From Hyphochytrium catenoides (Eukaryota > Protista > Hyphochytriomycota), in assembly GCA_900088475.1 (NCBI GenBank), contig FLMG01001166.1, forward strand, positions 62,001 to 126,000: a stretch of DNA of 64,000 nt, read 5' to 3'. Numbering within the stretch: position 1 is the stretch's first letter; the number at the start of each line of letters is the position of its first letter. The translations under genes were made by a program, and so were the position numbers. Under the pieces are notes generated by a model. It did no database searches. It was not told the origin of the DNA and worked only from the letters and a program-made list of their open reading frames with translations. This document shows positions 34 to 46,730 of this stretch, piece after piece.

Positions 34-3000
34 ATGAAGCGAAGCAAGATGAAGCTTCAGATGTGGCTTATGATGCTCTTCTGCTATTACCTGTCTGGAT
101 ATGACCGTGATATGAGGATGGTGCAAGCTCAGGTTGCCGTGGGAGGTATCTGTAGCTGCATTGGGCGTCAATCACTGAGGGGCCACCTCATAATCTATGG
201 TGATCCTGACACGTCAACCTACTGGAAAGCAGTCCAGACTGGTTTCCTAGAAGCATCCAAGCGACTCTGCATCCGTGCAGACATTCGGACGGTCCCTGCA
301 ACGGAGTTTTTCACTAAGTATCAATACTCTGCACGTGATGCACTAAATAGTCGACTGCAAGCATTCCTAAGTGAAGCAAGCCAGTATCCTCCCACTACCG
401 ACTTCATCGTCACGTCCGCCGTGAATGAATGGCACAGAAGGAGCCGTAGCTGCGCTCCGGAGTGCTGGCTACAAGGTCTTTACTATTGGAAGCTACACCC
501 CTCAGGGACATCTGCATGTGGGGCAGGATGACTATGACGCTGGCTTCCGCGCGGGAACACGTTGCGGCCAGGACCAGGCGCTGGATAATCTTTGCATCAT
601 CCATCAAGGGGCCAATCCGGTCTTTGTGGAACGATGTCGAGGCTTTCAAGATGGAGTCAAGAAAGCATGCACAAAGTGCAAAGCCCGGGTTGTGATGGTT
701 AACAATGATAATATGGAAGAAGCTATCATCACTATCCGCGAAGCTGCGACAGTGAACACGACAGGCTTCTTCGTCCTCTCTGACACAATGTCTCAACCAT
801 TGAAACGAGCTGTCCAGGGTCTGCCGACACCAAAGACTCCCTTCATCTTGGGGTCCTGTGACCTTTTGGAGAACAATCGCAAACTTCTCCGAGAGAAGCA
901 ACTAAGCTTTGTCGCCGACCAGCAGCCATATCTCAAGGTTACATAGCAACCATGACTGCAGTGCAATTCATGTGGACTGGGAACAAGCCCGTAAATCGAT
1001 ATATCAATACGGGCTCCTATCTTGTCAATGCGATTGTCAGGACGAAGAGATGCTAAAGCAAAGCGAAGTCCGCCTCCGCATCGTTCTCAGCGGGCGAGAT
1101 ACGAGTCAATTCTGGCAAGTAGTCAAGAGTGGCTTTCGTGAGGCTGCTGCAGATACTGGCCTTGAGTACAAAGACTGCAATAACCAAACGGTCGTCTGTA
1201 ATGCCACCGACGGACTGCAATACCGCGCACCTGCGGGAACTTTTGACGTTGGAATGGCGAACAGTTTCCTGGATGATCTGGTCGTGGAGAAAGCCAATGG
1301 TATCGTCCTCACTGTTGCTAATAGTGAAGCAATGGCAGACTCAATCTTAAACGCGGACAAGGCTGGGTAAAGATGTTGACCTTCAATTCGTGGCAGACGG
1401 CACGGGCAGACATTGGCGTGAATTTTGCCACTCATATTGGTCAGGACGAATGTGTGGCGGGTTTCATGATGGGAGAGCGCCTAAGAACATTGGGCTTTAG
1501 ATCCATCCTTTTTCTCAACTCACAAGTAGGCAATATTGGAACGGACCTTCGGTTGGGAGGGTTGAACGCAGCTTTCAATGGCAGTGGCATCAGCGTCCAT
1601 ATAGCCAAAGTAGCATCTGACAACATCCCAGCGTCGTACAAAGCAATGGACGATGTCTTTGCTCTCGGTACTTCTCCCCCAATTGACTGCATGATTGCCA
1701 TTGGTTCCTTTACCGCACACGCCGTGAAGTACGTAACCACCAATAGTACATCTGGTTCGGTTGCCTCGCAGTCCAAGGTCGTTAACTTCGATGTGAACGA
1801 GCAAATATTGGCGATGATACAAGCGGGCAACGTTGCGTTCTCCATCAACCAGCAACAGTATCTCCAGGGGTATTTGCCAATCGTTCTCATGCACCTCCTT
1901 CTGGTCTCTGGGCAGCAGTTGAGGGAGCCACTTATCCTCACGGGCCCCAGCATCGTTGATTTGAGCAACATTAACAATCACTGCATGGGCTACCTCTGTC
2001 CTTCTTCTGCGTCTCCTAACGCTATCGGTAGTGCTCCTGGCGGAGAACGAAACAATAGTTGCCCGTTTCCCTCTTGGGCGGGGGACGGGTTTTGCGACTC
2101 CGTCAACAACATCCCAGAATGTGGCTATGACGGTGGTGATTGCTGTGCCTCAACGTGCAAAAGTAGACGCTTTGCTTGTAACTCGGACTTCTTCAGCATA
2201 AACTTCAACAGTTATAAGTGCCTAGATCCGTCAGCAAAAGAGACGTGCAAGCCCGGACAAGAGTTTCAGAAGGGAATCTGCGTGGACTGCCCGTCGGGGT
2301 TCTTTGGCCCTGATGGACAGGTTTGCATTCCTTGTTTCTCCTTCTCGCAGCGATTGCGATGTGAGGGGAAGACCTATGTGTATGCCCGCAAAGGATATTG
2401 GTTGAATGAGACTCGCCTCAGTTCAGCGCTGAAGTCTATTGCTTGGGACGAACTGGGAACAAGCGAGCTTAATCGCTCCAAAGCTATCTCTTCTGCTGTA
2501 GATGCCTCAGTCTTCCTCTGTCCGCAAGGGTTTTGTCCTGGTAAACGTGACCCATAGAGTCGCTAGGCTTTGGAACGGTGAGTGGATGTTACTCCGGCTA
2601 CGATCCTGCCTCTCCTCTTTGCATGGGATGTGCTGAAGGGTATGAAAAAATTGGGACAGCTTGCCAACGCAGCGGTGCCAGTGAATGTGCTAATGTCAGC
2701 TTGAGAGTTCGCGCTGTGACCTTCCTCGGAGTGGGAATAGGCGTGATGCTCGCCACCCTTGTGGTCCTCTTGCGGGACACCACCTCCAGTAAAGTTCAGT
2801 CAGCCTCAATATTGATACTCATCTATTTCATTCAGGGTAAGACGTGCTTGATTGACCGCTATCCGCGCGCATCATCATGTGGGAGCCTTTTGGCCTGCTA
2901 GTGTCACGCTTCACTGATACCTACTGATGTTCACTTATCTTGTCCATGGAACAGCTCAAGTTGGGATTGGGCAAAACTCGCCCACCGGTAAAACTCCCGG

Positions 3001-25425: not shown

Positions 25426-25962
25426 AGTGTTGATCTCACTGAGAGTTCAAGACCTTTCAATCACAGGATAACTAGGGCTGAAGTAAGGTTATCCTCGCGA
25501 GAAATCAGTGATCTAGGGAGGGACAGTGTCTGGTGACCGCAGTCGTTGGACTATAGAATGGAGGGAGATAGACACAACCCCAACCTTCCAGCCGCTAAGC
25601 TATCTAGCGTCTGACAACAGCTCAATTTTATGTGGAGCATGTGTGTGGCTATAACATCGCTGTGATGGTCAGGATGACGGGTTGTATAGCCTGAGTGATG
25701 TTCATTGTCAAATCTCAATGACCATCCCTAAGGCTGGAAAGGACCAATGGAACAGATCGAAGGCGCAGAGCTTAGGGAGGTCTCACTGAAAAGATTGTCG
25801 GGCCATGTCTTTGAAAGCAAGCGCTAGGAGGTTAGTAGATTTTAATAAACACTTATGGTCGATAGAATCAGACCGGCATTGGAAGGGAGCGTAAGAGAGG
25901 AATGACTGCCTCTCGTAATCTTAAGGGTCTATCTGCCCGTTATGCCCGCGTCAGTCCATTCC

Positions 25963-28900
25963 CTAGACGATAGGGCCGAGAGAAGAACTACTCTGAAGCG
26001 TATTGTCCCCTTCAATTCCTGCCCTAAGAAGCACTTCTGCCTCCTGTCTGTTGAGCCACTTCCCGTTAAGGGGAGTGCTGCTGCCTGGCACTGCCAGCTG
26101 AATACGGGTTGGCAGACGAGAGTCTGCCCAACGGAGGCCTAGACGAATGCGTGGAGGCTGGCTATCTTGCTCCCGATTTACCTCTCCAGCCACATTCACG
26201 GCCGTTAAGAGCTTGTTTGAGTTAGGCACCTTTAATTCGTACCATCGTGTGTGCTGGTTGCCGTCGGCGAGCTGTGAAAGAGGGATTTGAACCTCTCCTA
26301 GCACGTGGTCACGGACGCCCGCAGTGTTATAAACAGCGACCTGCGTCAATGAGATTAGAAGCATGCTCGAATGACCCTCTCTTCCTTCCCTGTCCTTTAT
26401 CCTTCTTAACAATCTGTTGTTCAGCCCTGTGCTTTCTTAAGATCTAGCTTGTTGTGGTTTCTATCTTACCTTAAGTGTCTCCTGTCTGTTAGTACGGTGG
26501 AGCCTGTATGACTCGTTCCAGTGAGGGTTAGAGGTTCCTGCAGAGACTATGGTTCTTTCTACGTGATCGCCAATAGTCAACAAGCAGTAGCAGCTGATGT
26601 GCGAGCTGAGCTCGTCATCTTTCAATCCTGACGCCTGATAGACAGTTAGTAGGAGCTTGTCAGGAGTGTACTCTAGTCTCTTCCCCTCGACGTTGATGTC
26701 ATCGACGGCACAGACTTTTCCTGCAGTCCAAACCCCAGGGCGACCAGGGTCCATTATCAGGACTGAGTTGTTTACATCAAAGGTTTCCATATGAACCAAG
26801 CTCTTCTCCAGCCACCTTTCGTTGTCCAACCATAGAGGAGGAGAGCACACAGGGCTTCCATCCCCAATGCTCTCTTTCATATGAACCTTCAGCTTTCCCT
26901 TCTTAATCCAGGCTACACTAGCCTCTCTCCACTCATGTGGCACAGGTGACTCAATAAGAATGGTCTTCCCAATAAGAGAGAGACTCTCTCTCAGCTTGTG
27001 CTTCATCTTCCTTCCCCTGTACGCAATAAGATTCTTGGTGCCAGTGCTAATGTCAGATTTGGTGGAGTTGACAAGGAAGATAATCCCAAGGCCGAGATTC
27101 TCTAAGATGATGAAAGCCACTAACCGAGGGATGTATCCCAGGCACTCCGTTGACGGCCCGTAGTTCTCATCTGTGCCCCCACAACCAAAATAGGCGTCAA
27201 ACCCTCCAGTACAGGCAACGTAAAGGCCTGGAACAATCATCGCCGCCAGCATTGCCTCAAAGAAGAGAACATTTTCCCATGTGCCTATCCCTAACATTCT
27301 TTGCGGGATAGGTCGCTTGAAGTCAATGCATAGCTTGATCAGATCAAAGCGGAATGAGATTTTGTTGTTCACATAGCCGCAGAGGGCGCAGAATGGCCAA
27401 ACCACAGAGAAGAGCGTGATGTAGGAGAACTGTATGCATTGATGCAGGAGGTCAGAGAAGGAGGACCAGAAAGAGAGACCACCCTCCTCCAGCACCGTAT
27501 CTGCGGTATAGTTATAACTCCTGCACTCGAAGGAAGGCTTCAGGTAGAGAAGAGAGCTCATCTTCTCGTCATAAAGTTCCGCAAAGTCTTGAAGAAGTCT
27601 CTCATGAAGCATCGCGCTAACTTTGGCAAATCTGCTAGACGATGTCGCCTCCACGATGGAGGAGGTTAACGCCACGTCCTGGGAGCTGAGAGGAGGACTA
27701 CTTGCGCTATCCTCTTTCTTCTGTCCCAATGTCGAGGTAGAAGGAACAGCCATTTGCGCCGAAGGCGAGAGAGAGGACATTGGGGATGGCGTCACTCCCG
27801 CTTTATCTCTCCCAGCATTCTCTCCGCCCAAGATCCCTTTTTCTTTAAGCGCTTGCTTCATCTTCAACACGCCTTCGTCGATTGAGTCTGTAGTAACTCT
27901 GACTCTTGAACGAGCGGCAAGGATAGCCTTCCTTCCCAGCCAAGGAAGAAAAGTGTTCACTAACAAGTTAAGTCCTTGCGTTACCACCAGTGGGGTTACA
28001 AAGGCGCTGTCCATGGCTAGCTTAGCTGGAGGATGTGAAGAGGCAAGATGAAGTTCTATCAGCAAGCAATCTCGCAAGCGCATCAAAGAAGAGAGAGTAG
28101 AGCCTAAGGTGTTGGTAAAAGACGCTTTTAAGGAGTTTCCCTGAGGTGATGACACGAAGGTTTTTGCAGGTACCACAGAAAGCAATGAATGAGAAGAAGA
28201 TAGGAAGGAGCAAGTGTGCAGGTGGTTTGTCTTACACTGATCCCATTGCCTTGCATAGTACACCGAGTGGTTGAAAGTGACATACTTATTTGGGTCAATG
28301 TGCTTCATGATAAAAGTTTGAATGTCGCTGCCATAAGGAATGTAAAGAAAGGCGAGCACCAGGAACCAATAGAAGTATCCTAGCCACGTGAACAGAAATG
28401 TCTTCATCACGAAGCCCTTCGTCTTCTCAGCTGGAAGGAGAATAAAGTTAGTTGAGACCGAGAGAAAGGAACGAAGCGGGAAGAAAGGATAGACAGAGCC
28501 AAAGGACAGTATAAGCGATATGCGACGCACTGGGGACAATGACCAAAAGGTTGGAAGAATGAGATGATCAAAAGGAAACATATTATCCATAAGCCTGACA
28601 GGCAAAACACGACATCTGAGAAAAATGAGGTTGCAGGTCAAGGATAGGGACCAAGCCAGGATCTCACCCTGAGTTCTCCAATTCTCCCATTCATTAAACT
28701 TCGCCGCCAGCGCTTCAAAAATGGCAGTGAACAGAATGTCAATGGTAATTCCCAGCACCACTCCCTGGATGAAGATGTAGAACCAGCGGCCAGTTCCTAG
28801 TAGGGGTCTAGAAGACGCAAAGCATCCAAGGAAGCTGGAACACTCTGGACCGTAGATCCTGTTTGTCTCCTCACAATAGCTCTGGCAACTTTTGATGCCC

Positions 28901-31795
28901 AGCTCTTCCTGCACCTGTGCTGTGCACTTTTCTAAACAAACAGAGGAATCCACCCAGTCACAGCGCGGATCCACGCATGCCGGAGTCATTACAGCCACAA
29001 TATACCTAGGCCATCAGGGTCAGCGGCCATCAATAAGCGGTTTAAAGGCGAGGCTTGCCATGAGAAGAAAGACATAGCGATACGAAGAAGAATATACACT
29101 AAGATGGAAGAAGAAGACGGAGGTGGTGAGCACCGACGGCCTCGCCTTTTCTATAGATTGACGCTCCTTACCATTGAATATACAGCGCCAAAAAGACCGC
29201 CAGTATGAGGGTGCAGAAGCTAAAGAAACCGATGTAAACCAGGAACTTAAGCCAACGCTTCTTCGGGTTGTACACTTTTACAGAGATCAAATCGGGCTTC
29301 TCTCCGGGGTCAGCAATGTTGACAGTTTCAATGTGGTCGTGCTTGAAGTTTGGATTCTCATACTCGATCTGGATGGCAGGAGAGAAGAAGAGTATTGGTG
29401 GGTTATGACAGGTAAGGAACATGTCTAAAGAAGAAGATGCAGCGAAAAGAGCTCATCGAAGATTCTATGCAGGTCTGTACTATAGCCAGCCGAGAAAGGC
29501 GGGGCTGCCTGTCTTGAGAGCCAAAATAAGTAGAATAACCAGGCGAAAAGCATTCACAGCTCAAACCAAGGGAAAGGATCGCTGCTGTTCAGTGTGAAGG
29601 AGTTAGTGGGCATAGACCCAGACCCAGATCTTTACCTCGTGAGCCTGTAGCAGACCCCAGGACAGCTTCAACTCATTCAGCTTTCGCCTCCACAATTTGA
29701 TCAGGAGAGGAGCCCATATTAGAGCCATGAACATGCCAAAGAACCTGGAGAATGAGACCACAAGAAGCGTGAGAAAGATGAACGAGCCTGTAACATTTGC
29801 GATTTGGTGCCGAAAGCTACTCCGATAAGAGGTCCCGCTATGAAGGACTATGTAGCCAGTGGCACATTTTGTTTCCTAATCTCTTCTCCGCGTCACTATC
29901 TAAGCTCTTCACCACTACTCCTCGCGTCAGCCCTTCACTCACCCTAGGCCCGCTTGGTATGTTGAATAATCAGCCCAGCGCCAGATAATCCATATTAATG
30001 GTCCCAGTATACTGGGACCAGCCAGTGCCACAGTGTAGAGCCTAATGTAGGCGAAGTAGAATGCAACTTGCAAGCCAAAATGATTCTTGAGACGGTTGAG
30101 AGCCAGATTTTGCACAGCCTTGGACTTGGAGTCCAGACCCACCGACCAGTTCCGGAAGAAAAAGTCATTCAGGCTAACACAGATAAGATAAATTAAACAA
30201 TGCGATAAGCAGCCGGATAAGAGATACGAAGGGAACCGATCAAGTAGGGGCAACCGCGAGGTGATAAGGTAGGAAGAGAGAGACAGGACCAAAGAGATAA
30301 ACAGAGAGGGATGGAAGGAAAGACCGGCCATGTTCTTACCCGGCGTCATGGAGCGGAAAGACTGTCTGGATAATCTCGTCCTTGTTCTCCTCGATTCCTT
30401 GAATGCCAGCTCCTCGAGGTTCCCGCTCCACACTGCGGGTAAGCAGGTGCTGCCAGGCTTCGAGTCTATTCGCTGGAGTCAACACCTCTCCGTTATCCTC
30501 ATAGTCTTCCCCTATCGTTGCGGCCTGTAAGGGATAAGATTATGTGTGATAAGACTACGGTCCGGTCCTGTGGGACTCTTGATCCCCCGACGTCTATTTC
30601 TCCCCCTTGTCCTCATTCAATAGTCTTGGTATTTTCTGCCAGTACTCACTTCCCTAAATTCTTCGTTCCTAGCTCTACGCAGTCGTAACTTCTCGCTTCT
30701 CTCTTGCTTTGATTTCCCTGTCTTACATCTTCCTCTGATAGGTATTCCACAGCCCTTTCCATTCTCAGAAGCTTGTCCTCTCTCGAGATAAGCCATGATG
30801 GGGCATTGAGTAGAACTACGATGAACTCTCTTGAGGTCTGCGTAGCCTCTAGGATAGTCACCTCAATACCAGCTCTAGTGAGATTGGTAATAACCTATAG
30901 AGATGAGGAGATATGACAAAATTAGGTCATGAGCGTAGCTGTACTGTCGCCGATCGCAATCCTGAAGGTTGGAAACCAGATTTCACTTTCTGGGATGAAC
31001 TTGCCCTCTTTAACTGCAACGTAAGGTAATCTCTCTTCAATGTCTCTTACCTCTCGCTGCTGCAGATACTCCTTGGCCGGATCATCACCATGGTTCTTCA
31101 GCACCACTGCAAACTCGTAGGGTAGACGGGGCCGCAAGTTAAGCAGCTCAACAATAGCTGATGCCATCCACACAATGGTGCAGTCTTGCACTGTTGCAGA
31201 GAATTAGTCCAACTCAACTGAATAAAGGGAGGTTTAGAGCAGACATGTAGGAGAGAAAGAGGAGCAAGGTCAAGGCAGCGGAAGAGAGAAGAGGATGCTA
31301 GGGGCAATTGGTCAGGAGGGAGGAGAAGTGACGAAAGACGGAGAAGGACAGGCAGTACCTGCAGTGACTTCCGTAGAGGGTCCATCTTGCTTGCAATCTG
31401 CTGGGAAACCGAAGACAGACGCCTCTTCATATATAGTGCCTGACGATGAGATGGCCTTGCCCGACTTTACTATGTACAGACCATCTACAAATGGCCAGTG
31501 AATAAGGGCAGATAAAGGCCGGTATATAGCTACCAAACTCACCGCACTGCTCCCCTGTCCGTGTGATACTGGCATCCTTCTTATAGTGCCGTACTTGAAC
31601 TATGCGAGTCAGCATCAGCAACTCATCCTCGGGTATATTTTTTAGGCAGGCAACCTCTCTTAGGAATCGTGCCTCGCAGACAGGGTCCTCCAACCTCTTT
31701 GTGATGAGCTCCCCAACACTCGGAAAAAGCCCTGCAAAGCAGAGAATTCCCGATTTCACCTTCTTTAAGCCGCGAACTACCAACTCATTCGCCAT
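25963..31795 (-). CDS. Anoctamin/TMEM16 family channel or scramblase with N-terminal cNMP-binding-like domain and C-terminal C2 domain
   Basis: Anoctamin motifs LKNHFGLQVAFYFAY, NEWENWRTQ/AE..VMKTFLF, IQFSYITLFSVVWP, VNNKISFRFDLIKL, KRPIPQRMLGIGTW. cNMP-type ITRTGEQC/DGLYIVKSG...VFG after splicing. C2 LLLTVYQASGL...NPHWNESY...LGEVQIPLSQL...WYEL. Exon phases checked for the cNMP exons and two anoctamin introns; the exons between about 29000 and 31000 were not fully phase-checked. Confidence 0.85.
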
Positions 31796-32651
31796 CTTGA
31801 GGCAGAGGTGAGTGATCAAATGCCTTTGACAAAGTGAGGCCTAGAGGCACTCTATCATGCCCACATGCTCCTTTACTAAGCCCAGATCAACTTTCGAACG
31901 AGCTGTCTCGGAGGTGATCTTGAGCGCACTGACGGTGTATTCTGGCTGCTATTGAGCTCGACCTTTACCTCCATAGAAGCTCCTTACGCGCCTATCTCAA
32001 CTTCAGCTTAGGCTCGCTCCCTATCCTCCTCTCCACAGCCACATCTCTCTTCGCTCCGTCATCCCTTCTCGGCTCCATCTATATGATTCTAACCCTCTGT
32101 TCTGAGTAGAAGTTCAACTCCGTCCACAGCGGGATAGAAGAGCTAGTTGCGAGCCTCCATGTCAGCACCAGGCCTGGGGTTATAAGACTGACAAGTCAAG
32201 GTTTGACATGCAACGAGGGCCCACGAAAGAAGTAACGGCCCTTCCAACCTCTTTGTAACACCCACTCACTCATACCAAGAAGTGATAACCGATTACTGAT
32301 TCTTCCGCGTTAGCGGCTATCTGACGGTCCTTGTACTGTGCGAGTACTCGTAGATTTTTGACTTGATTTTTGAATATTGATATCTGCCGCCAAGTGGCAC
32401 TCTGTGTGGAGATTTTATAGGACAAACCAGGACGAACGGATGAACCTGTGAAGACAGAGACAGAGACTCTTCAGGCGTTAGGAGTATCTTTTTGCAGATA
32501 GTACGTCCGTAAGAGCAAGAGGCTCATGACTTGGGAAGAGTAAGGGCGCCGGCCAATAGACTCGCCTCAAAGATAGCTAGCGCCGGCGTGGAAGGTCTCC
32601 TTTAGCTTACATCTTACAAGTGATCCGATAGAGATTAATTAAAGGCAAAGC

Positions 32652-33632
32652 ATGCAGGATCACGCATTTGCCACTAGGGCCAGGAAAAAAACTAGTAGGG
32701 AGGAGCGAGAGCCAACGAATGGGAAGAAGACCAAGAAGAGGCAGCGCAAGGCTCGTGATGCGTATTCACCTGAGGGAGAGGAAAGTTTAGATGAAGGACG
32801 GAGACGATGGACTTCGTCCACTGTGGCATTCTTCTCCAGGGCTAACGTGGGCTTGTACTATCTCTTCAGCATCTTCCTGGCTGGCTTCCTAGCCAATACA
32901 TTGCTAACAGATGAGTTTCAACGGTCAGACTCCCAGCAAGAATGGTTTGCTCTAGCAGTCGGAGTAGGAAAGATGACCTTTGTTATGTTCAAGTACAGGA
33001 AGTCCAATCCTCTACCATCATCACTATTGGCAACTATTATTGGCAGCTTCGTCTTCCAATTTGCAGTTGGAAGCTTGGAAAATCTTCTTTTTGGCACCGT
33101 ACCTTCTTGGCTACGGAATCCGGCTGTGATAGTTCAGCACATCTTCTGCTTCAGCCTAATCTTTTGGTCGCCAGCAGATATCATCTTTACAGAGCTTCAG
33201 CGTCATTTGGTATTACAGGTCTCTATCGGGTGTCTATACACGGTCGCTAAGGTCCGAGCAGTACATCGTATACATTCGCATACAGACAAGCAGTGGTGGT
33301 ATGGTGGCATTCTTCTCTCCTTCTGGGAGCTTTTTGGGAACACGCTGCTGACGAAGCTCTATGTGTGGCTGGTGTCTGCGTTATATCAACGGCGACGCGA
33401 TAGCTTAGCCTTGAAGGCCGTCAAGGATTTTTTCTCTTCTACACGCATGGGGATGTCTTACATTCTGTTTGCTACTGTCTTCGTCTTATTCCTTTTCATT
33501 AGCACAACCACCTCAACTGGAACGGACTATTGGAAACACCCGCTCACTATCCTGGCGTTTAGCTTCCTCATTTTGAAGGACTATTCGCATCTGTGGAGTA
33601 CCATTACACACGGCAAGAAGAAGCACAGTTGA
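32652..33632 (+). CDS. TRIC/TMEM38-like trimeric intracellular cation channel homologue, intronless
   Basis: 326-aa multi-TM ORF. NPLPSSLLATIIGSFVFQFAVGSLENLLFGTVPSWL...LIFWSPADII resembles the TMEM38 TM2-TM3 region. Ends in KKHS, a KKxx ER-retrieval motif. Confidence 0.6.
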   Translation: MQDHAFATRARKKTSREEREPTNGKKTKKRQRKARDAYSPEGEESLDEGRRRWTSSTVAFFSRANVGLYYLFSIFLAGFLANTLLTDEFQRSDSQQEWFALAVGVGKMTFVMFKYRKSNPLPSSLLATIIGSFVFQFAVGSLENLLFGTVPSWLRNPAVIVQHIFCFSLIFWSPADIIFTELQRHLVLQVSIGCLYTVAKVRAVHRIHSHTDKQWWYGGILLSFWELFGNTLLTKLYVWLVSALYQRRRDSLALKAVKDFFSSTRMGMSYILFATVFVLFLFISTTTSTGTDYWKHPLTILAFSFLILKDYSHLWSTITHGKKKHS

Positions 33633-39557: not shown

Positions 39558-40637
39558 GTAGTGAACGACAGTTGCATGTAGACCTTGATGAAGCTACATA
39601 CTTTCAACGGGTGCAGAAGGTATTCCACCAGCTTGACGTCCGCACGGCTTTCGCGACTCATGGGCAGGTTGAAGCCGCCCTGAAGACTATTGAAGACCAT
39701 AGTAAGTCAAGACTTGGAGGTTTCCTGCCACTCAATGTATCGTAATACTCCGTCTTCATAGGGAAGGGTCTTGTTCGTCCAAGTGCCGACACTCTTTTTC
39801 ATGCGACGAAGCTGAAGAACGCCATCGTCCATCCCGATACAGGTATAAGGACGCGCATTTTGCTCTTCTCCTCCGATGTTGCTAAACCTTCTTTATTTCT
39901 CAGGGGAAAAGGTCCTTCTGCCTCTGAGAGTCAGCATGATCGTGCCGATGAACCTTATTCTGGACGCTGGGATGATGTCTGCGTCGACTCTGTCTTCTAC
40001 TGTCTTCTGGCAGTGGCTCAATCAGACCTATAACGCCCTTCACTACTACGCTAATCGGAACGCATCCAATCATGATACCTCTACCCAGCGTTTAGTAGCC
40101 TACCTTGCCGCAACCGGAAGCTCAGTGTGGGCGGCTTTAAAAGTACGGAGGCTAAGCGATCAGGCACCTGCGGCTGCCCGCTGGGGCCCGTACCTTAGGC
40201 GCCTTGGGCCATTTGCAGCTGTGGCTGCGGCAGACGTCCTGAACCTTCCCTTGATGAGACAGAGTGAGTTCTTACATGGTGTGGATTTGTTTGACGAGAA
40301 CGGAAGGTATGTAGGGAAGAGTAAGAGGGCTGGTGTCGTAGCTGTCAGCTCCTGTGTGGCAGGCCGAGTCTTTGCCGCGGCACCTATTCTCTGCATCCCT
40401 CCCTTGATAATGCAGAAGCTGGAAGGGAAGGAGCTGCTGAAGCGCAGACCAGTGCTTCGTATTCCCATACTACTCTCGTTGGTAGGAGTGATGATTCAGT
40501 TCTCGGTCCCACTAACCTTCGGGTTATTCAAGCAAACGGCGCAGGTTAATGTGAGATATTTAGAGCCCCAATTTAGACGCGTCATTCGAGACGATGGGCT
40601 CTTGATGAAGTATGCAACTTATAATAAAGGCATATAG
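39558..40637 (+). CDS. SFXN: Sideroflexin (mitochondrial serine/tricarboxylate carrier); start lies in or before the N gap
   Basis: LDEATYFQRVQKVF..LDVR, AIVHPDT/GEKVLLPLRVS, FWQWLNQTYNA..YANRNAS, PFAAVAAADVLNLPLMRQSE, YNKGI*. Introns at about 39702-39761 and 39843-39903. Confidence 0.92.
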
Positions 40638-41221: not shown

Positions 41222-42472
41222 TCAGGCCACTGGATTCCAAGGACAGCTGGATTTCCATGCCTCCTTCAAGAGAGCTCGTTTCTCCTGATACGCCTCCCAG
41301 AGTTTCGCTGACTCGACACGATTACGGAGGTGACCCAAAACTGTCTTGTTTAGCAGATTGTCGTTGAGATTTGGGTTTGCACTTGACCCGGTAGGCTTCC
41401 TGGCACTGGCTTCCTTCGAAGCAGCTTGCTGGACATACATCTGCTCTTGGAGTTTTCCCTTATGTTGGAGCTGCTCAATGCTGCGCAGTATCTTTTGCTT
41501 CTTGTTAGCAGCAGGGTTTTGCGCATCTAAAGAAACCTCTGCAATCGCCTGCACTACATTGTCATCCTCAAAGCTTGGGATTTCCTCCTGTCTGCTGAAG
41601 TGCTGGACTGCTGCCATTGCAGCTCGTGAAGGCACAGGTTTCCTTCCAAAGAACCACGGATGGTTGAGAATATCATCGATGGAAGGTCTTCTAGACGGTT
41701 CAACAACCAACATCTTGTTAAGAAGGTCCATCGCATCGCCAGAGAACCAAGTGTGCATCTTCCACGCCCTTAAAAGAGCCTTGGCACCGCTGCTTTTCAT
41801 CAGTCGGAAACGATCATCCTGCACAGAAGGGAGTTCCATTGGAGGAACGCCCGTCAGCATGATAAAGAGAACAATGCCTAGAGACCAAACGTCAGCCACC
41901 GTAGCTTCATACTCCTGAGACGTATACGTTTCTGGACTCATATAGAAGAACTTGCCGACAGAGTCCGAATGTTTCTGTGAGGTGGTGGCAGACAGACCAA
42001 AGTCACATACTTTGCATGTGTCCTCATCATCCACCAGGACATTCTCTAAAGAAATATCTCTATGGGCGATGCCTTGCTCATGAATGTACCTAACTCCGCT
42101 AACAATCTGGTGAAACCAAGTCCGTGCCTGGTCCTCAGAGAAACGCTGATTTGAGGCCTCCTCGATAAGGCCATAGAGCTCCCCCTTGCCACAATACTCC
42201 AGGACCAAGTAGAGAAATCCATTCTCCGTGAACTCAGAGATCAACCTCAACACGTTAGGATGACCCCCATCCTTGCTCAGAATTTTCATTGCTTGGCGCT
42301 CAGCTTCAGCATCCTCCTTTATCCTGGTGCCGTTTAACGACTGCTTGCGAAGCGCATTGGAAAGGCGCACTCTCTTAATCGCCACCAATTCCTGGGTCTG
42401 AACGTCCTTGGCGAGGACAACATCGCCATAAAGGGCGGATTTTAGAGATCGGACGACCCGATAGTTATCCAT
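41222..42472 (-). CDS. Ser/Thr protein kinase, CAMK-like, intronless
   Basis: VAIK, HRDISLEN, DFG, GKFFYMSPE, DVWSLG; Q/K-rich C-terminal tail. Confidence 0.95.
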   Translation of the reverse strand: MDNYRVVRSLKSALYGDVVLAKDVQTQELVAIKRVRLSNALRKQSLNGTRIKEDAEAERQAMKILSKDGGHPNVLRLISEFTENGFLYLVLEYCGKGELYGLIEEASNQRFSEDQARTWFHQIVSGVRYIHEQGIAHRDISLENVLVDDEDTCKVCDFGLSATTSQKHSDSVGKFFYMSPETYTSQEYEATVADVWSLGIVLFIMLTGVPPMELPSVQDDRFRLMKSSGAKALLRAWKMHTWFSGDAMDLLNKMLVVEPSRRPSIDDILNHPWFFGRKPVPSRAAMAAVQHFSRQEEIPSFEDDNVVQAIAEVSLDAQNPAANKKQKILRSIEQLQHKGKLQEQMYVQQAASKEASARKPTGSSANPNLNDNLLNKTVLGHLRNRVESAKLWEAYQEKRALLKEAWKSSCPWNPVA

Positions 42473-45308: not shown

Positions 45309-46730
45309 ATGCATGAAGGCGTCAGTCATCATACGCCTCTTCTAGAAGAGGAAGAGGCTGTGCAACGCTCAATAGGAAATGATGGGAGCGGGCCGCCGGG
45401 ATCGTTTCTAGAGGGAGCGACTAGCTCTAATCAAGGACCACATAAAGGACTAGCGGCGAATGTGCGGTTGAGGAGGAGGCGTTACGTGGATGTTGGTAGA
45501 GGCATCACCATCTTCCTAATGATCTTTGTGAATCACTGCGACGGAGATAAGCCCTTTTGGATTGCCCACGCTGTTTGGGATGGTATGCACCTAGCTGACA
45601 CGGTTATGCCCGCCTTTCTCTTCATTGTTGGCGTCTCGATAGCTCTTTCGACACAGAGTCACATGTCCAGCAACGAGACCATAAAAACAGCGTTGCGAAG
45701 AGTAGGCATGCGAAGCATGAAGCTATTTGCCTTGGGACTATTTCTTCAGGGCGGAAGTGAGGATGGCCAGTTTCCAGCCTTCAATCTAAGGAGAGTGCGC
45801 ATCATGGGAGTTCTTCAAAGGATATCCATCGCTTACTTCTTCACTGCGACCCTTTTTCTTCTATGCCTTCCGAAATCCACAGTCTGCACCACCCTTGGGC
45901 ACGACGGCCATCCGCTCAAATCTGCTCCGCAGAAGAGAAAGAAGAAGCGCCGGGATCCGTCGTGGGTTCTGTGGGCCGTTGCCATTACACTCTTTATCGC
46001 CTACACTCTCTGCAGTCTGTGCATCCCGGTCCCTTCCTGTCCTTATCTACCTCCTTTAGCTCCAACGTGTAACCTTGCCTCTTATCTGGATACAGTGATA
46101 CTCTCTGTGGACCATATGTACCGCTATCCTCTCTGTGTCAGGGCAGATCCTCCCTGCTTTGCTCTTGAACCTGAGGGTCTCTTTACCTCTCTTGGAGCTA
46201 TCATAACATGCTTTTTGGGACTGTATTACGGAGTGCATTTGAACAAAATGGACGTTGGCCGTCGAGTTTGCCAGAAGCTCCAGCTTGTCTATGGCTCCTT
46301 AGTAATCGGAGGAGTCTGTCTGCATGCTTCAGGCCTTCCGCTGAACAAGCAGCTTTACTCTTCTAGTTATATTCTCATGACTGCCGGACTCACAGCCCTG
46401 CTTCTCAACCTTCTCTCCGCTATAGAAGCTAAAGGTAACAAGGACTTCGAGGGGGCTAAGATCATTCTACTAGGGCAGATTCCGTTTATGTGGCTTGGAA
46501 TGAACAGCATCCTAGTCTTCGCTGGGGACGAAATGCTACATCTCGTGCTTCAAAGCTGGTTCTGGTGGGAGAGCCGGGATAGAAACTTATATAACTTCAT
46601 AGTTGGCTGTTTGAAAAGGATTGTTCACAGCGAAGCATATGCCCAACTCTGCTATGGCCTACTGATTGGGTGCTTCTGGATGTACATTGCCCGGTTTCTC
46701 TACCACCGAAAGATCTTTATAAAAGTCTAA
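45309..46730 (+). CDS. HGSNAT: Heparan-alpha-glucosaminide N-acetyltransferase-like, intronless
   Basis: RYVDVGRGITIFLMIFVN, HAVWDGMHLADTVMPAFLFIVGVSI, RIMGVLQRISIAY, EPEGLFTSL, PLNKQLYSSSY, GMNSILVF, LYHRKIFIKV. Confidence 0.93.
   Translation: MHEGVSHHTPLLEEEEAVQRSIGNDGSGPPGSFLEGATSSNQGPHKGLAANVRLRRRRYVDVGRGITIFLMIFVNHCDGDKPFWIAHAVWDGMHLADTVMPAFLFIVGVSIALSTQSHMSSNETIKTALRRVGMRSMKLFALGLFLQGGSEDGQFPAFNLRRVRIMGVLQRISIAYFFTATLFLLCLPKSTVCTTLGHDGHPLKSAPQKRKKKRRDPSWVLWAVAITLFIAYTLCSLCIPVPSCPYLPPLAPTCNLASYLDTVILSVDHMYRYPLCVRADPPCFALEPEGLFTSLGAIITCFLGLYYGVHLNKMDVGRRVCQKLQLVYGSLVIGGVCLHASGLPLNKQLYSSSYILMTAGLTALLLNLLSAIEAKGNKDFEGAKIILLGQIPFMWLGMNSILVFAGDEMLHLVLQSWFWWESRDRNLYNFIVGCLKRIVHSEAYAQLCYGLLIGCFWMYIARFLYHRKIFIKV

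What the first reader, a model, noticed from the sequence alone, without database searches (positions are those of the whole stretch)
25963..31795. Anoctamin fused to a cyclic-nucleotide-binding-like domain and a C2 domain
Seen: splicing gives one reading path from MANELVV through a cNMP-type fold (FLREVACLKNIPEDELLMLTRIVQVRHYKKDASITRTGEQCDGLYIVKSG...VFG...EVTAVQDCTIVWM), the TMEM16 core and a complete C2 domain. Known: animal TMEM16 proteins and fungal nhTMEM16/afTMEM16 are gated by Ca2+ bound inside the membrane domain and carry neither module. Inference: a channel or scramblase under second-messenger or lipid control through appended sensor domains, an architecture I do not recognise.
Basis: partly seen in the sequence, partly recalled or inferred. 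Interest (0 to 1): 0.88.

Follow-up and report, generated by a model that had tools for sequence, protein, structure and literature searches.

The report
Anoctamin fused to sensor-like domains
A real 12-exon gene encodes a TMEM16/anoctamin membrane protein carrying a cyclic-nucleotide-binding-type fold at its start and Tudor-like and C2 domains at its end. The same uncharacterised layout exists in oomycetes, but the residues that normally bind cyclic nucleotide and calcium are mostly missing here.

Summary
On the minus strand, 31795-25963, twelve exons with eleven GT-AG introns (58-267 nt) give one 1291-aa reading path. It is collinear end to end with a 1339-aa uninterrupted ORF from a public assembly and with more than 20 oomycete proteins.

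Profile and fold searches confirm the CNB fold and the C2. DNA variants from another strain support the exon model: all 10 indels lie in predicted introns, and 15 of 18 exonic substitutions are synonymous. No RNA run was listed, so a single transcript is inferred, not shown.

The "sensor" reading is weakened:
- The phosphate-binding cassette lacks both its Glu and its Arg.
- The C2 keeps at most 1-2 of 5 Ca2+ ligands.
- The intramembrane Ca2+ site keeps 3 of 6 ligands (N,N,D,H,S,D), a pattern conserved across the family.

My best reading is a TMEM16 scramblase-type protein without canonical Ca2+ or cNMP gating. Its appended modules would act as a structural or allosteric and membrane-docking apparatus, partly like yeast Ist2.

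The architecture is not unique to this genome, but I found no paper describing it.

The parts
25963..31795 (-). Whole coding region: 12 exons, 1291 aa. Exons: 31795-31543, 31484-31359, 31190-31051, 30894-30727, 30524-30340, 30173-29943, 29744-29636, 29368-29172, 29005-28668, 28430-28236, 28025-26470, 26340-25963 (stop included).
   Evidence: All introns are GT-AG and the model is collinear with P0001. Indels of another strain lie only in introns.
31135..31672 (-). CNB-type (cyclic-nucleotide-binding-like) fold, aa 42-145, spread over exons 1-3. The degenerate phosphate-binding cassette is at aa 108-126 (31360-31416).
   Evidence: 38.8 bits against an HMM of 58 unrelated CNB domains, shuffles at most 5.3. 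The family profile hits PKG/PKA CNB domains in PDB, E 9e-10 to 2e-5. The AF2 model of the orthologue matches PKA/PKG CNB domains with TM by target 0.6-0.74.
30161..31134 (-). TMEM16 N-terminal cytosolic domain (alpha-beta plait type), aa 146-295, exons 3-6.
   Evidence: 45% mean identity to oomycete orthologues. Shared with anoctamins that lack the CNB. Only weak Pfam Anoctamin_N and Anoct_dimer hits on P0001.
27043..30160 (-). Anoctamin/TMEM16 membrane core, aa 296-975, with ten hydrophobic segments. It contains a Cys-rich outer loop between TM3 and TM4 and a ~135-aa Ser/Pro-rich cytosolic insert between TM6 and TM7 (27493-27897).
   Evidence: Pfam Anoctamin. PDB sequence hits to afTMEM16, nhTMEM16, ANO10, ANO6 and ANO1. 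Hydropathy profile.
27943..27972 (-). TM6 part of the Ca2+ site: N667 (= nhTMEM16 N448) is kept; N671 replaces E452.
   Evidence: HMMER alignment of the family profile to nhTMEM16; family alignment.
27343..27456 (-). TM7/TM8 part of the Ca2+ site: D839 (= D503) kept, H842 replaces E506, S871 replaces E535, D875 (= D539) kept.
   Evidence: phmmer alignment to nhTMEM16/afTMEM16. D...H and ...D are invariant in 19 family members; position 535 is Ala or Ser.
26674..26934 (-). Tudor/Agenet-like all-beta module, aa 1012-1098 (tentative name).
   Evidence: 12 of 16 family members give sub-threshold Pfam Agenet hits, best E 2.8e-4. The window's own piece gives none. The AF2 model of the orthologue is beta-rich with pLDDT about 90. 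It is conserved with the window.
26089..26673 (-). C2 domain, aa 1099-1250, split by intron 11 (26469-26341).
   Evidence: Pfam C2 on both halves. The orthologue model matches solved C2 domains: VIA-align Z 17.6, Foldseek TM by target up to 0.86. The profile aligns to synaptotagmin-1 C2A.

Best explanation
Shown: this is one intron-rich gene for a 1291-aa TMEM16/anoctamin-family protein. Its domain order is CNB-type fold, TMEM16 N-domain, ten-helix core, Tudor/Agenet-like module, C2. It belongs to a subfamily shared with oomycetes. The host organism looks like a stramenopile outside the sampled oomycetes.

Inferred: the core most resembles the fungal and ANO10-type scramblases, so the protein most likely moves lipids (and perhaps ions) across an internal or plasma membrane. 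It does not use the canonical two-Ca2+ switch, because three of the six intramembrane ligands are replaced by Asn, His and Ser. That pattern is fixed across the family.

The CNB-type fold lacks the Glu and Arg that hold a cyclic nucleotide. It therefore most likely works as a CNB-homology domain: a structural or allosteric module packed against the cytosolic N-domain, as in KCNH channels, rather than as a cAMP/cGMP receptor.

The C2 lacks most Ca2+-ligand aspartates in this protein. It most likely docks the C-terminus onto an acidic membrane surface or a partner without needing Ca2+. This would place or hold the protein at a membrane contact, partly in the manner of yeast Ist2.
For: One gene:
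- Continuous frame through 11 GT-AG introns, none longer than 267 nt.
- Full-length collinearity (aa 43-1278) with P0001 and five Saprolegniales proteins at 36-38% identity.
- The same Pfam Anoctamin+C2 content in 19 of the 22 proteins returned; the other three are short or partial and show Anoctamin only.
- The variant pattern fits coding exons, including the CNB exons.

CNB fold.

Degenerate cassette: Glu absent in 18 of 18 family members. Arg is present in 11 of 18 but absent in the window and in P0001.

Ca2+ site: N,N,D,H,S/A,D.

Nearest solved relatives: afTMEM16 and nhTMEM16 (E 1e-13), then ANO10, ANO6 and ANO1.

C2: the fold is confirmed, but in the window the ligand positions read E,S,N,A,H against synaptotagmin-1 D172, D178, D230, D232, D238.

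Lineage: the sideroflexin in the same window is 59-66% identical to all oomycetes alike and 53% to plants.
Against: - No transcript evidence was available.
- No activity, ligand binding or localisation can be tested here.
- The conserved His/Asn/Ser constellation could still bind one Ca2+ or another ion.
- Eleven of 18 oomycete members keep the cassette Arg, so some ligand binding in the family cannot be excluded.
- The linker between TM10 and the C-terminal modules is only about 35 aa in this protein (100-170 aa in Peronosporales). That is short for bridging two membranes as Ist2 does.
- The structures were predicted for the orthologue P0001, not for the window's own protein.
- Inter-domain confidence was low (pTM 0.54).
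Confidence: 0.5

Rival explanations
1. One reading: a channel or scramblase gated by cAMP/cGMP through the N-terminal CNB domain and by Ca2+/lipid through the C2.
For: The fold is a true CNB homologue. Eleven of 18 oomycete orthologues retain an Arg at the cassette position aligned to the phosphate-binding Arg of PKG. Oomycete C2 domains keep three of five acidic ligand positions.
Against: In the window's protein the cassette Glu is Phe and the Arg is Pro. The Glu is absent in all 18 relatives. No family member tested here reached Pfam's cNMP_binding gathering score (P0001 14.7 bits against 27.5; family best E 1.6e-5). The window's C2 keeps at most one or two acidic ligand positions.
Confidence: 0.15
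2. The protein is mainly a membrane-contact tether like yeast Ist2. The TMEM16 core would serve as an anchor that has lost transport, and the C-terminal Tudor-like plus C2 modules would reach another membrane.
For: The Ca2+ site is remodelled. There is a C-terminal lipid-binding-type domain. Peronosporales orthologues have long low-complexity linkers before the C-terminal modules.
Against: The TM core is the best-conserved part (45-50% identity to oomycetes), and the replaced ligand positions are themselves invariant. This suggests a working site rather than decay. The linker in this protein is short.
Confidence: 0.2
3. The CNB-type fold is a receptor for a ligand other than cAMP/cGMP (for example a nucleoside, as in trypanosome PKA regulatory subunits), and that ligand gates the TMEM16 core.
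For: CNB folds with altered cassettes bind other ligands; such structures are among the fold matches (6hyi and 6h4g). The domain is under purifying selection and is conserved from this lineage to oomycetes.
Against: Cassette residues vary between family members, which argues against one shared small ligand. No pocket analysis was possible.
Confidence: 0.1
4. Gene-model artefact: the CNB exons (31130-31795) belong to a separate short gene, and the anoctamin starts downstream.
For: No RNA evidence was available. Read-through of intron 3 would give a stop after 42 codons, so a short product is conceivable.
Against: The introns flanking the junction are 156 and 202 nt, which leaves no room for a terminator and a promoter. 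The frame is continuous. The fusion is present as one ORF in P0001 and in more than 20 oomycete gene models.
Confidence: 0.05

Closest known systems
Fungal TMEM16 scramblases nhTMEM16 and afTMEM16 (PDB 4wis, 6dz7) and mammalian TMEM16K/ANO10
   Same: These are the best sequence matches among solved structures (E about 1e-13 to 1e-11). They share the ten-helix core, the N-terminal cytosolic domain, and conserved N448, D503 and D539 equivalents.
   Different: E452, E506 and E535 equivalents are Asn, His and Ser. The protein also has a CNB-type fold in front, a Tudor-like module and a C2 behind, a Cys-rich TM3-TM4 loop and a ~135-aa TM6-TM7 insert. None of these extras matched any solved TMEM16 chain.
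Oomycete proteins P0002-P0022 (Achlya, Aphanomyces, Pythium, Globisporangium and unnamed assemblies), named only automatically
   Same: The order of modules is the same over the full length at 36-38% identity. The remodelled Ca2+-site pattern is the same.
   Different: Oomycete members have longer N-terminal extensions and long low-complexity inserts before the Tudor-like module and inside the C2. Many keep the cassette Arg and three acidic C2 ligand positions that the window's protein lacks. The window's gene is intron-rich.
Yeast Ist2 (TMEM16 homologue that tethers ER to plasma membrane); comparison from general knowledge
   Same: A TMEM16 core without the canonical Ca2+ ligands, plus a C-terminal lipid-binding element.
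   Different: Ist2 uses a long disordered linker and a polybasic tail, not a C2, and it has no CNB-type or Tudor-like module. Not tested here.
CNB-homology domains of KCNH/EAG-type channels; comparison from general knowledge
   Same: A CNB fold attached to a membrane transport protein, lacking the residues needed for cyclic-nucleotide binding.
   Different: In KCNH the domain follows the pore at the C-terminus and is occupied by an intrinsic ligand. Here it precedes a TMEM16 core. No intrinsic ligand was tested.

Membership tests
TMEM16/anoctamin (Pfam PF04547) | Match to the Anoctamin profile above the curated cutoff | tested here: met
   124.5 bits against cutoff 28 on the exon-9-to-11 reading. 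Further hits on exons 6 and 7. P0001 scores 226 bits.
TMEM16/anoctamin (Pfam PF04547) | Ten membrane helices in the family's order | tested here: met
   Hydropathy shows nine clear segments plus the weaker TM8 at the positions aligned to nhTMEM16. This is a simple scale, not a dedicated predictor.
TMEM16/anoctamin (Pfam PF04547) | Six intramembrane Ca2+ ligands (nhTMEM16 N448, E452, D503, E506, E535, D539) | tested here: not met
   Three are kept (N667, D839, D875) and three replaced (N671, H842, S871).
TMEM16/anoctamin (Pfam PF04547) | Ca2+-activated scrambling or ion conduction | not testable with these tools
   Needs proteoliposome or patch-clamp assays.
Cyclic-nucleotide-binding domain (Pfam PF00027) | Eight-stranded beta roll with flanking helices | tested here: met
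   The AF2 model of orthologue P0001:30-300 has pLDDT 82-96 over the first 90 residues. Foldseek matches PKA/PKG CNB domains with TM by target 0.6-0.74 and rmsd 3-4 A. The window's own protein was not folded.
Cyclic-nucleotide-binding domain (Pfam PF00027) | Pfam profile score above the gathering cutoff (27.5 bits) | tested here: not met
   The window's exon pieces give no hit. P0001 gives 12-15 bits. 17 of 18 relatives match only at E<=1, best 1.6e-5. The spliced window sequence could not be passed to Pfam, but it scores 38.8 bits on my own HMM of 58 CNB domains.
Cyclic-nucleotide-binding domain (Pfam PF00027) | Phosphate-binding cassette Gly-Glu and Arg-Thr/Ser | tested here: not met
   In the window, Phe111 stands for the Glu and Pro120 for the Arg. 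In the family, Glu is 0 of 18 and Arg 11 of 18.
C2 domain (Pfam PF00168) | Profile match above cutoff and beta-sandwich fold | tested here: met
   30.3 bits (cutoff 22) for the first half and 20.1 bits for the second half across the intron. The orthologue scores 67-71 bits. VIA-align Z 17.6 to a solved C2.
C2 domain (Pfam PF00168) | Five acidic Ca2+ ligands of the Ca2+-dependent type (synaptotagmin-1 C2A D172, D178, D230, D232, D238) | tested here: not met
   The window reads E, S, N, A, H at the aligned positions. Oomycetes keep D178, D232 and a Glu at 238. The synaptotagmin residue numbers are from general knowledge.
Tudor/Agenet (royal family) domain | Profile match above cutoff | tested here: inconclusive
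   Agenet hits in 12 of 16 members are sub-threshold only, best E 2.8e-4; the window's piece gives none. There is a weak UHRF1 tandem-Tudor hit, E 0.59. Fold searches were dominated by the C2.
Ist2-type TMEM16 tether | Degenerate Ca2+ site plus a long linker ending in a lipid-binding element | tested here: inconclusive
   The site is degenerate and a C2 is present. The linker is about 35 aa here and 100-170 aa in Peronosporales. Localisation is not testable.

The most novel reading that the evidence does not exclude
This could be a conserved stramenopile TMEM16 subfamily that gave up the intramembrane two-Ca2+ switch. It would instead be gated through its cytosolic modules: a CNB-type fold that binds a so far unknown small ligand (or a different ion at the Asn/His/Ser-remodelled site), and a C2 that reads membrane composition. 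That would be the first ligand-gated or contact-site-gated TMEM16.
Probability: 0.15. Interest if true: 0.8.

Novelty: new variant of a known kind. Interest (0 to 1): 0.55.

Why it matters
TMEM16 proteins are studied as Ca2+-gated channels and scramblases. All characterised members sense Ca2+ inside the membrane domain.

This subfamily fixes a different residue set at that site and carries three extra cytosolic modules. It is conserved from an intron-rich sister lineage through the oomycetes, which include major crop and animal pathogens.

It offers a natural test of how the TMEM16 core can be controlled without the classic switch. It may also point to a lineage-specific membrane protein in oomycetes.

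The finding is tempered by two facts: the architecture already sits in public databases under automatic names, and the sensor residues are degenerate.

Tried and rejected
- RNA evidence: no RNA run was listed for the 6-kb gene. A second search of any kind found only DNA-type contigs. Laying four runs gave no joints, so splicing is not shown directly.
- The first protein search, with the 850-aa mechanical ORF, returned only P0001, because the length filter hid the longer oomycete proteins.
- The window's own protein is not in the protein collections searched. It could not be referenced as a spliced sequence, so Pfam and structure prediction were run on exon pieces and on orthologue P0001.
- Tudor-like module: the profile search against PDB gave nothing significant, and fold searches were swamped by the C2. 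The name stays tentative.
- CNB-anoctamin fusions outside this family: seven anoctamins sharing the N-domain have no detectable CNB. None of the other top-150 CNB hits has an anoctamin core. The AlphaFold DB cluster search added only an oomycete fragment.
- The ESM Atlas look-up gave no taxonomic help.
- L001 has no poly(A) tail, so I cannot say whether P0001's contig is a transcript or intronless genomic DNA.
- Literature searches found no description of the architecture. A Stentor preprint and a Pythium proteomics paper only mention anoctamin-like proteins in passing.


Full report
**What is in the sequence**

The region 25963-31795 holds a minus-strand gene. Six-frame translation showed collinear coding pieces separated by short stretches with stops.

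I read the DNA and used tblastn of the one full-length relative then available (P0001). This placed eleven introns, every one GT...AG and 58-267 nt long. They join twelve exons into a 3876-nt frame of 1291 codons with no internal stop.

The start is the first ATG after an in-frame stop, and the stop is TAG at 25965-25963. Two introns (9 and 10) happen to be free of stops in frame, which is why the mechanical ORF list shows an 845-aa ORF that reads through them.

**Support for the model without RNA**

No RNA run was listed. A second search found DNA-type contigs of the same species label and of soil metagenomes. Laid on the gene, they show no joints, as expected of genomic DNA, but they differ from the window at many places.

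- All ten indels lie in predicted introns 2, 4, 6, 8, 9 and 10, although introns make up only 34% of the span.
- Of the 40 substitutions listed, 22 are intronic.
- Of the 18 exonic substitutions, 15 are synonymous in my frame. The three replacements are I17V, H1123D and D1225E.
- Six of the exonic changes lie in the CNB exons 1-2, and five of those are synonymous.

The CNB exons are therefore coding and under purifying selection in the frame that continues into the anoctamin. The introns around the CNB/anoctamin junction are 156 and 202 nt, which is too short to hold a terminator and a promoter. A single transcript is therefore a strong inference, but it is not shown.

**Relatives**

The 850-aa ORF found one protein, P0001. 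It is 1339 aa and is an uninterrupted ORF filling a 4061-nt public contig. Its N-terminal region then found 21 more proteins from Achlya, Aphanomyces, Pythium, Globisporangium and unnamed assemblies. Nineteen of the 22 carry both Pfam Anoctamin and C2, and the other three are short or partial with Anoctamin only. Two carry the automatic name "Cyclic nucleotide-binding domain-containing protein".

The window's protein aligns to them from residue 43 to 1278 at 36-38% identity, about equally to Saprolegniales and Peronosporales.

A sideroflexin gene in the same window is 59-66% identical to all oomycetes alike, then 53% to plants. The organism therefore looks like a stramenopile outside the sampled oomycetes, and the fusion predates the oomycete radiation (inference). 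Its own proteins are absent from the collections searched.

**The CNB-type fold**

- Pfam does not see it in the separate exon pieces and gives only 12-15 bits for P0001.
- A profile of 18 family N-termini hits PKG and PKA cyclic-nucleotide-binding domains in PDB. The E-value is 9e-10 for multi-domain PKG and 2e-5 for a single PKG II domain aligned over its whole length.
- 17 of 18 members give sub-threshold Pfam cNMP_binding hits.
- The AlphaFold model of P0001:30-300 matches solved PKA/PKG CNB domains at TM 0.6-0.74 and rmsd 3-4 A.
- The window's own spliced residues 42-140 score 38.8 bits against an HMM that I built from 58 CNB domains of unrelated proteins. 500 shuffles reach at most 5.3 bits.

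The fold assignment is therefore sound. In that alignment, however, the cassette that holds the nucleotide reads FGF...GPSTE. Phe stands where the ribose-binding Glu should be, and Pro where the phosphate-binding Arg should be. The Glu is missing in all 18 relatives, and the Arg is present in 11 of them.

**The membrane core**

The nearest solved proteins are afTMEM16 and nhTMEM16, then ANO10, ANO6 and ANO1. Hydropathy gives the ten segments expected.

| nhTMEM16 ligand | Window residue | Status |
|---|---|---|
| N448 | N667 | kept |
| E452 | N671 | replaced |
| D503 | D839 | kept |
| E506 | H842 | replaced |
| E535 | S871 | replaced |
| D539 | D875 | kept |

These assignments come from alignments to nhTMEM16. 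The pattern is invariant in 19 family members, except for Ala or Ser at the 535 position. This confirms the separate first-stage note on this window (s1-347886). A fixed, not decaying, replacement set suggests a working but different site.

**The C-terminus**

After TM10 comes a conserved beta-rich module of about 90 residues. Twelve of 16 members give sub-threshold Agenet hits, and the window's own piece gives none. I call it Tudor/Agenet-like only tentatively.

The C2 is clear from several results:
- Pfam.
- Foldseek, TM by target up to 0.86.
- VIA-align, Z 17.6.

Aligned to synaptotagmin-1 C2A, the five acidic Ca2+ ligands read E, S, N, A, H in the window. Oomycetes keep three acidic positions. 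The synaptotagmin residue numbers are from general knowledge.

**Reading**

The architecture is real and conserved, but each of the three classic ligand sites is degenerate in this protein. These are the cyclic nucleotide site, the intramembrane Ca2+ site and the C2 Ca2+ site.

I therefore favour a TMEM16 scramblase-type protein that is not switched by Ca2+ or cNMP in the canonical way. The CNB fold would act as a homology domain, and the C2 as a Ca2+-independent docking module, with some likeness to Ist2.

The rivals are true cNMP/Ca2+ gating, a pure tether, a different small ligand, and a split gene. They are scored in their own sections.

**Novelty**

No solved TMEM16 chain matches the CNB or C2 profiles. 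Among 1.84 billion representative proteins, only this family pairs the CNB with the anoctamin N-domain within the top hits. No paper in the searchable library describes it.

It is already in public databases under automatic names, so this gene is a divergent member of an undescribed TMEM16 variant.

Noticed in passing
window 28780-29005 (aa ~470-545): The outer loop between TM3 and TM4 is Cys-rich (about ten Cys). Many of these Cys are invariant in the oomycete family alignment A3, suggesting a disulfide-stabilised luminal or extracellular domain.
   Followed up: partly
window 27493-27897 (aa 691-825): A ~135-aa Ser/Pro-rich, poorly conserved insert (20% identity to oomycetes) lies in the cytosolic TM6-TM7 loop next to the Ca2+ site. 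It is a possible phosphoregulatory loop.
   Followed up: no
window 28431-28667 and 28026-28235: Introns 9 and 10 contain no in-frame stop, so a mechanical ORF of 845 aa (26461-28998) reads through both. A naive ORF call would add 149 spurious residues.
   Followed up: yes
window 25900-31899: Contigs from DNA runs of the same species label differ from the window at about 80 positions in 6 kb (another strain or allele). Soil metagenome contigs match exon 11 and its neighbourhood at 95-99%, so the organism or a close relative lives in soil.
   Followed up: partly
window 39876-40634 (+): This is a sideroflexin (mitochondrial carrier) exon. Its best hits are all oomycetes at 59-66% identity. I used it here only to place the organism.
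   Followed up: partly
window 41225-42472 (-) and 45309-46727 (+): A protein kinase ORF (Pfam Pkinase, E 3e-59) and an HGSNAT-like acetyltransferase ORF.
   Followed up: no
window 1373-2554 (+): An ORF with a periplasmic-binding-protein domain followed by an LNR (Notch) repeat. Other first-stage findings already note it.
   Followed up: no
window 32652-33629 (+): A divergently oriented 326-aa multi-pass membrane ORF lies about 850 bp upstream of the anoctamin start, with no significant Pfam match.
   Followed up: no
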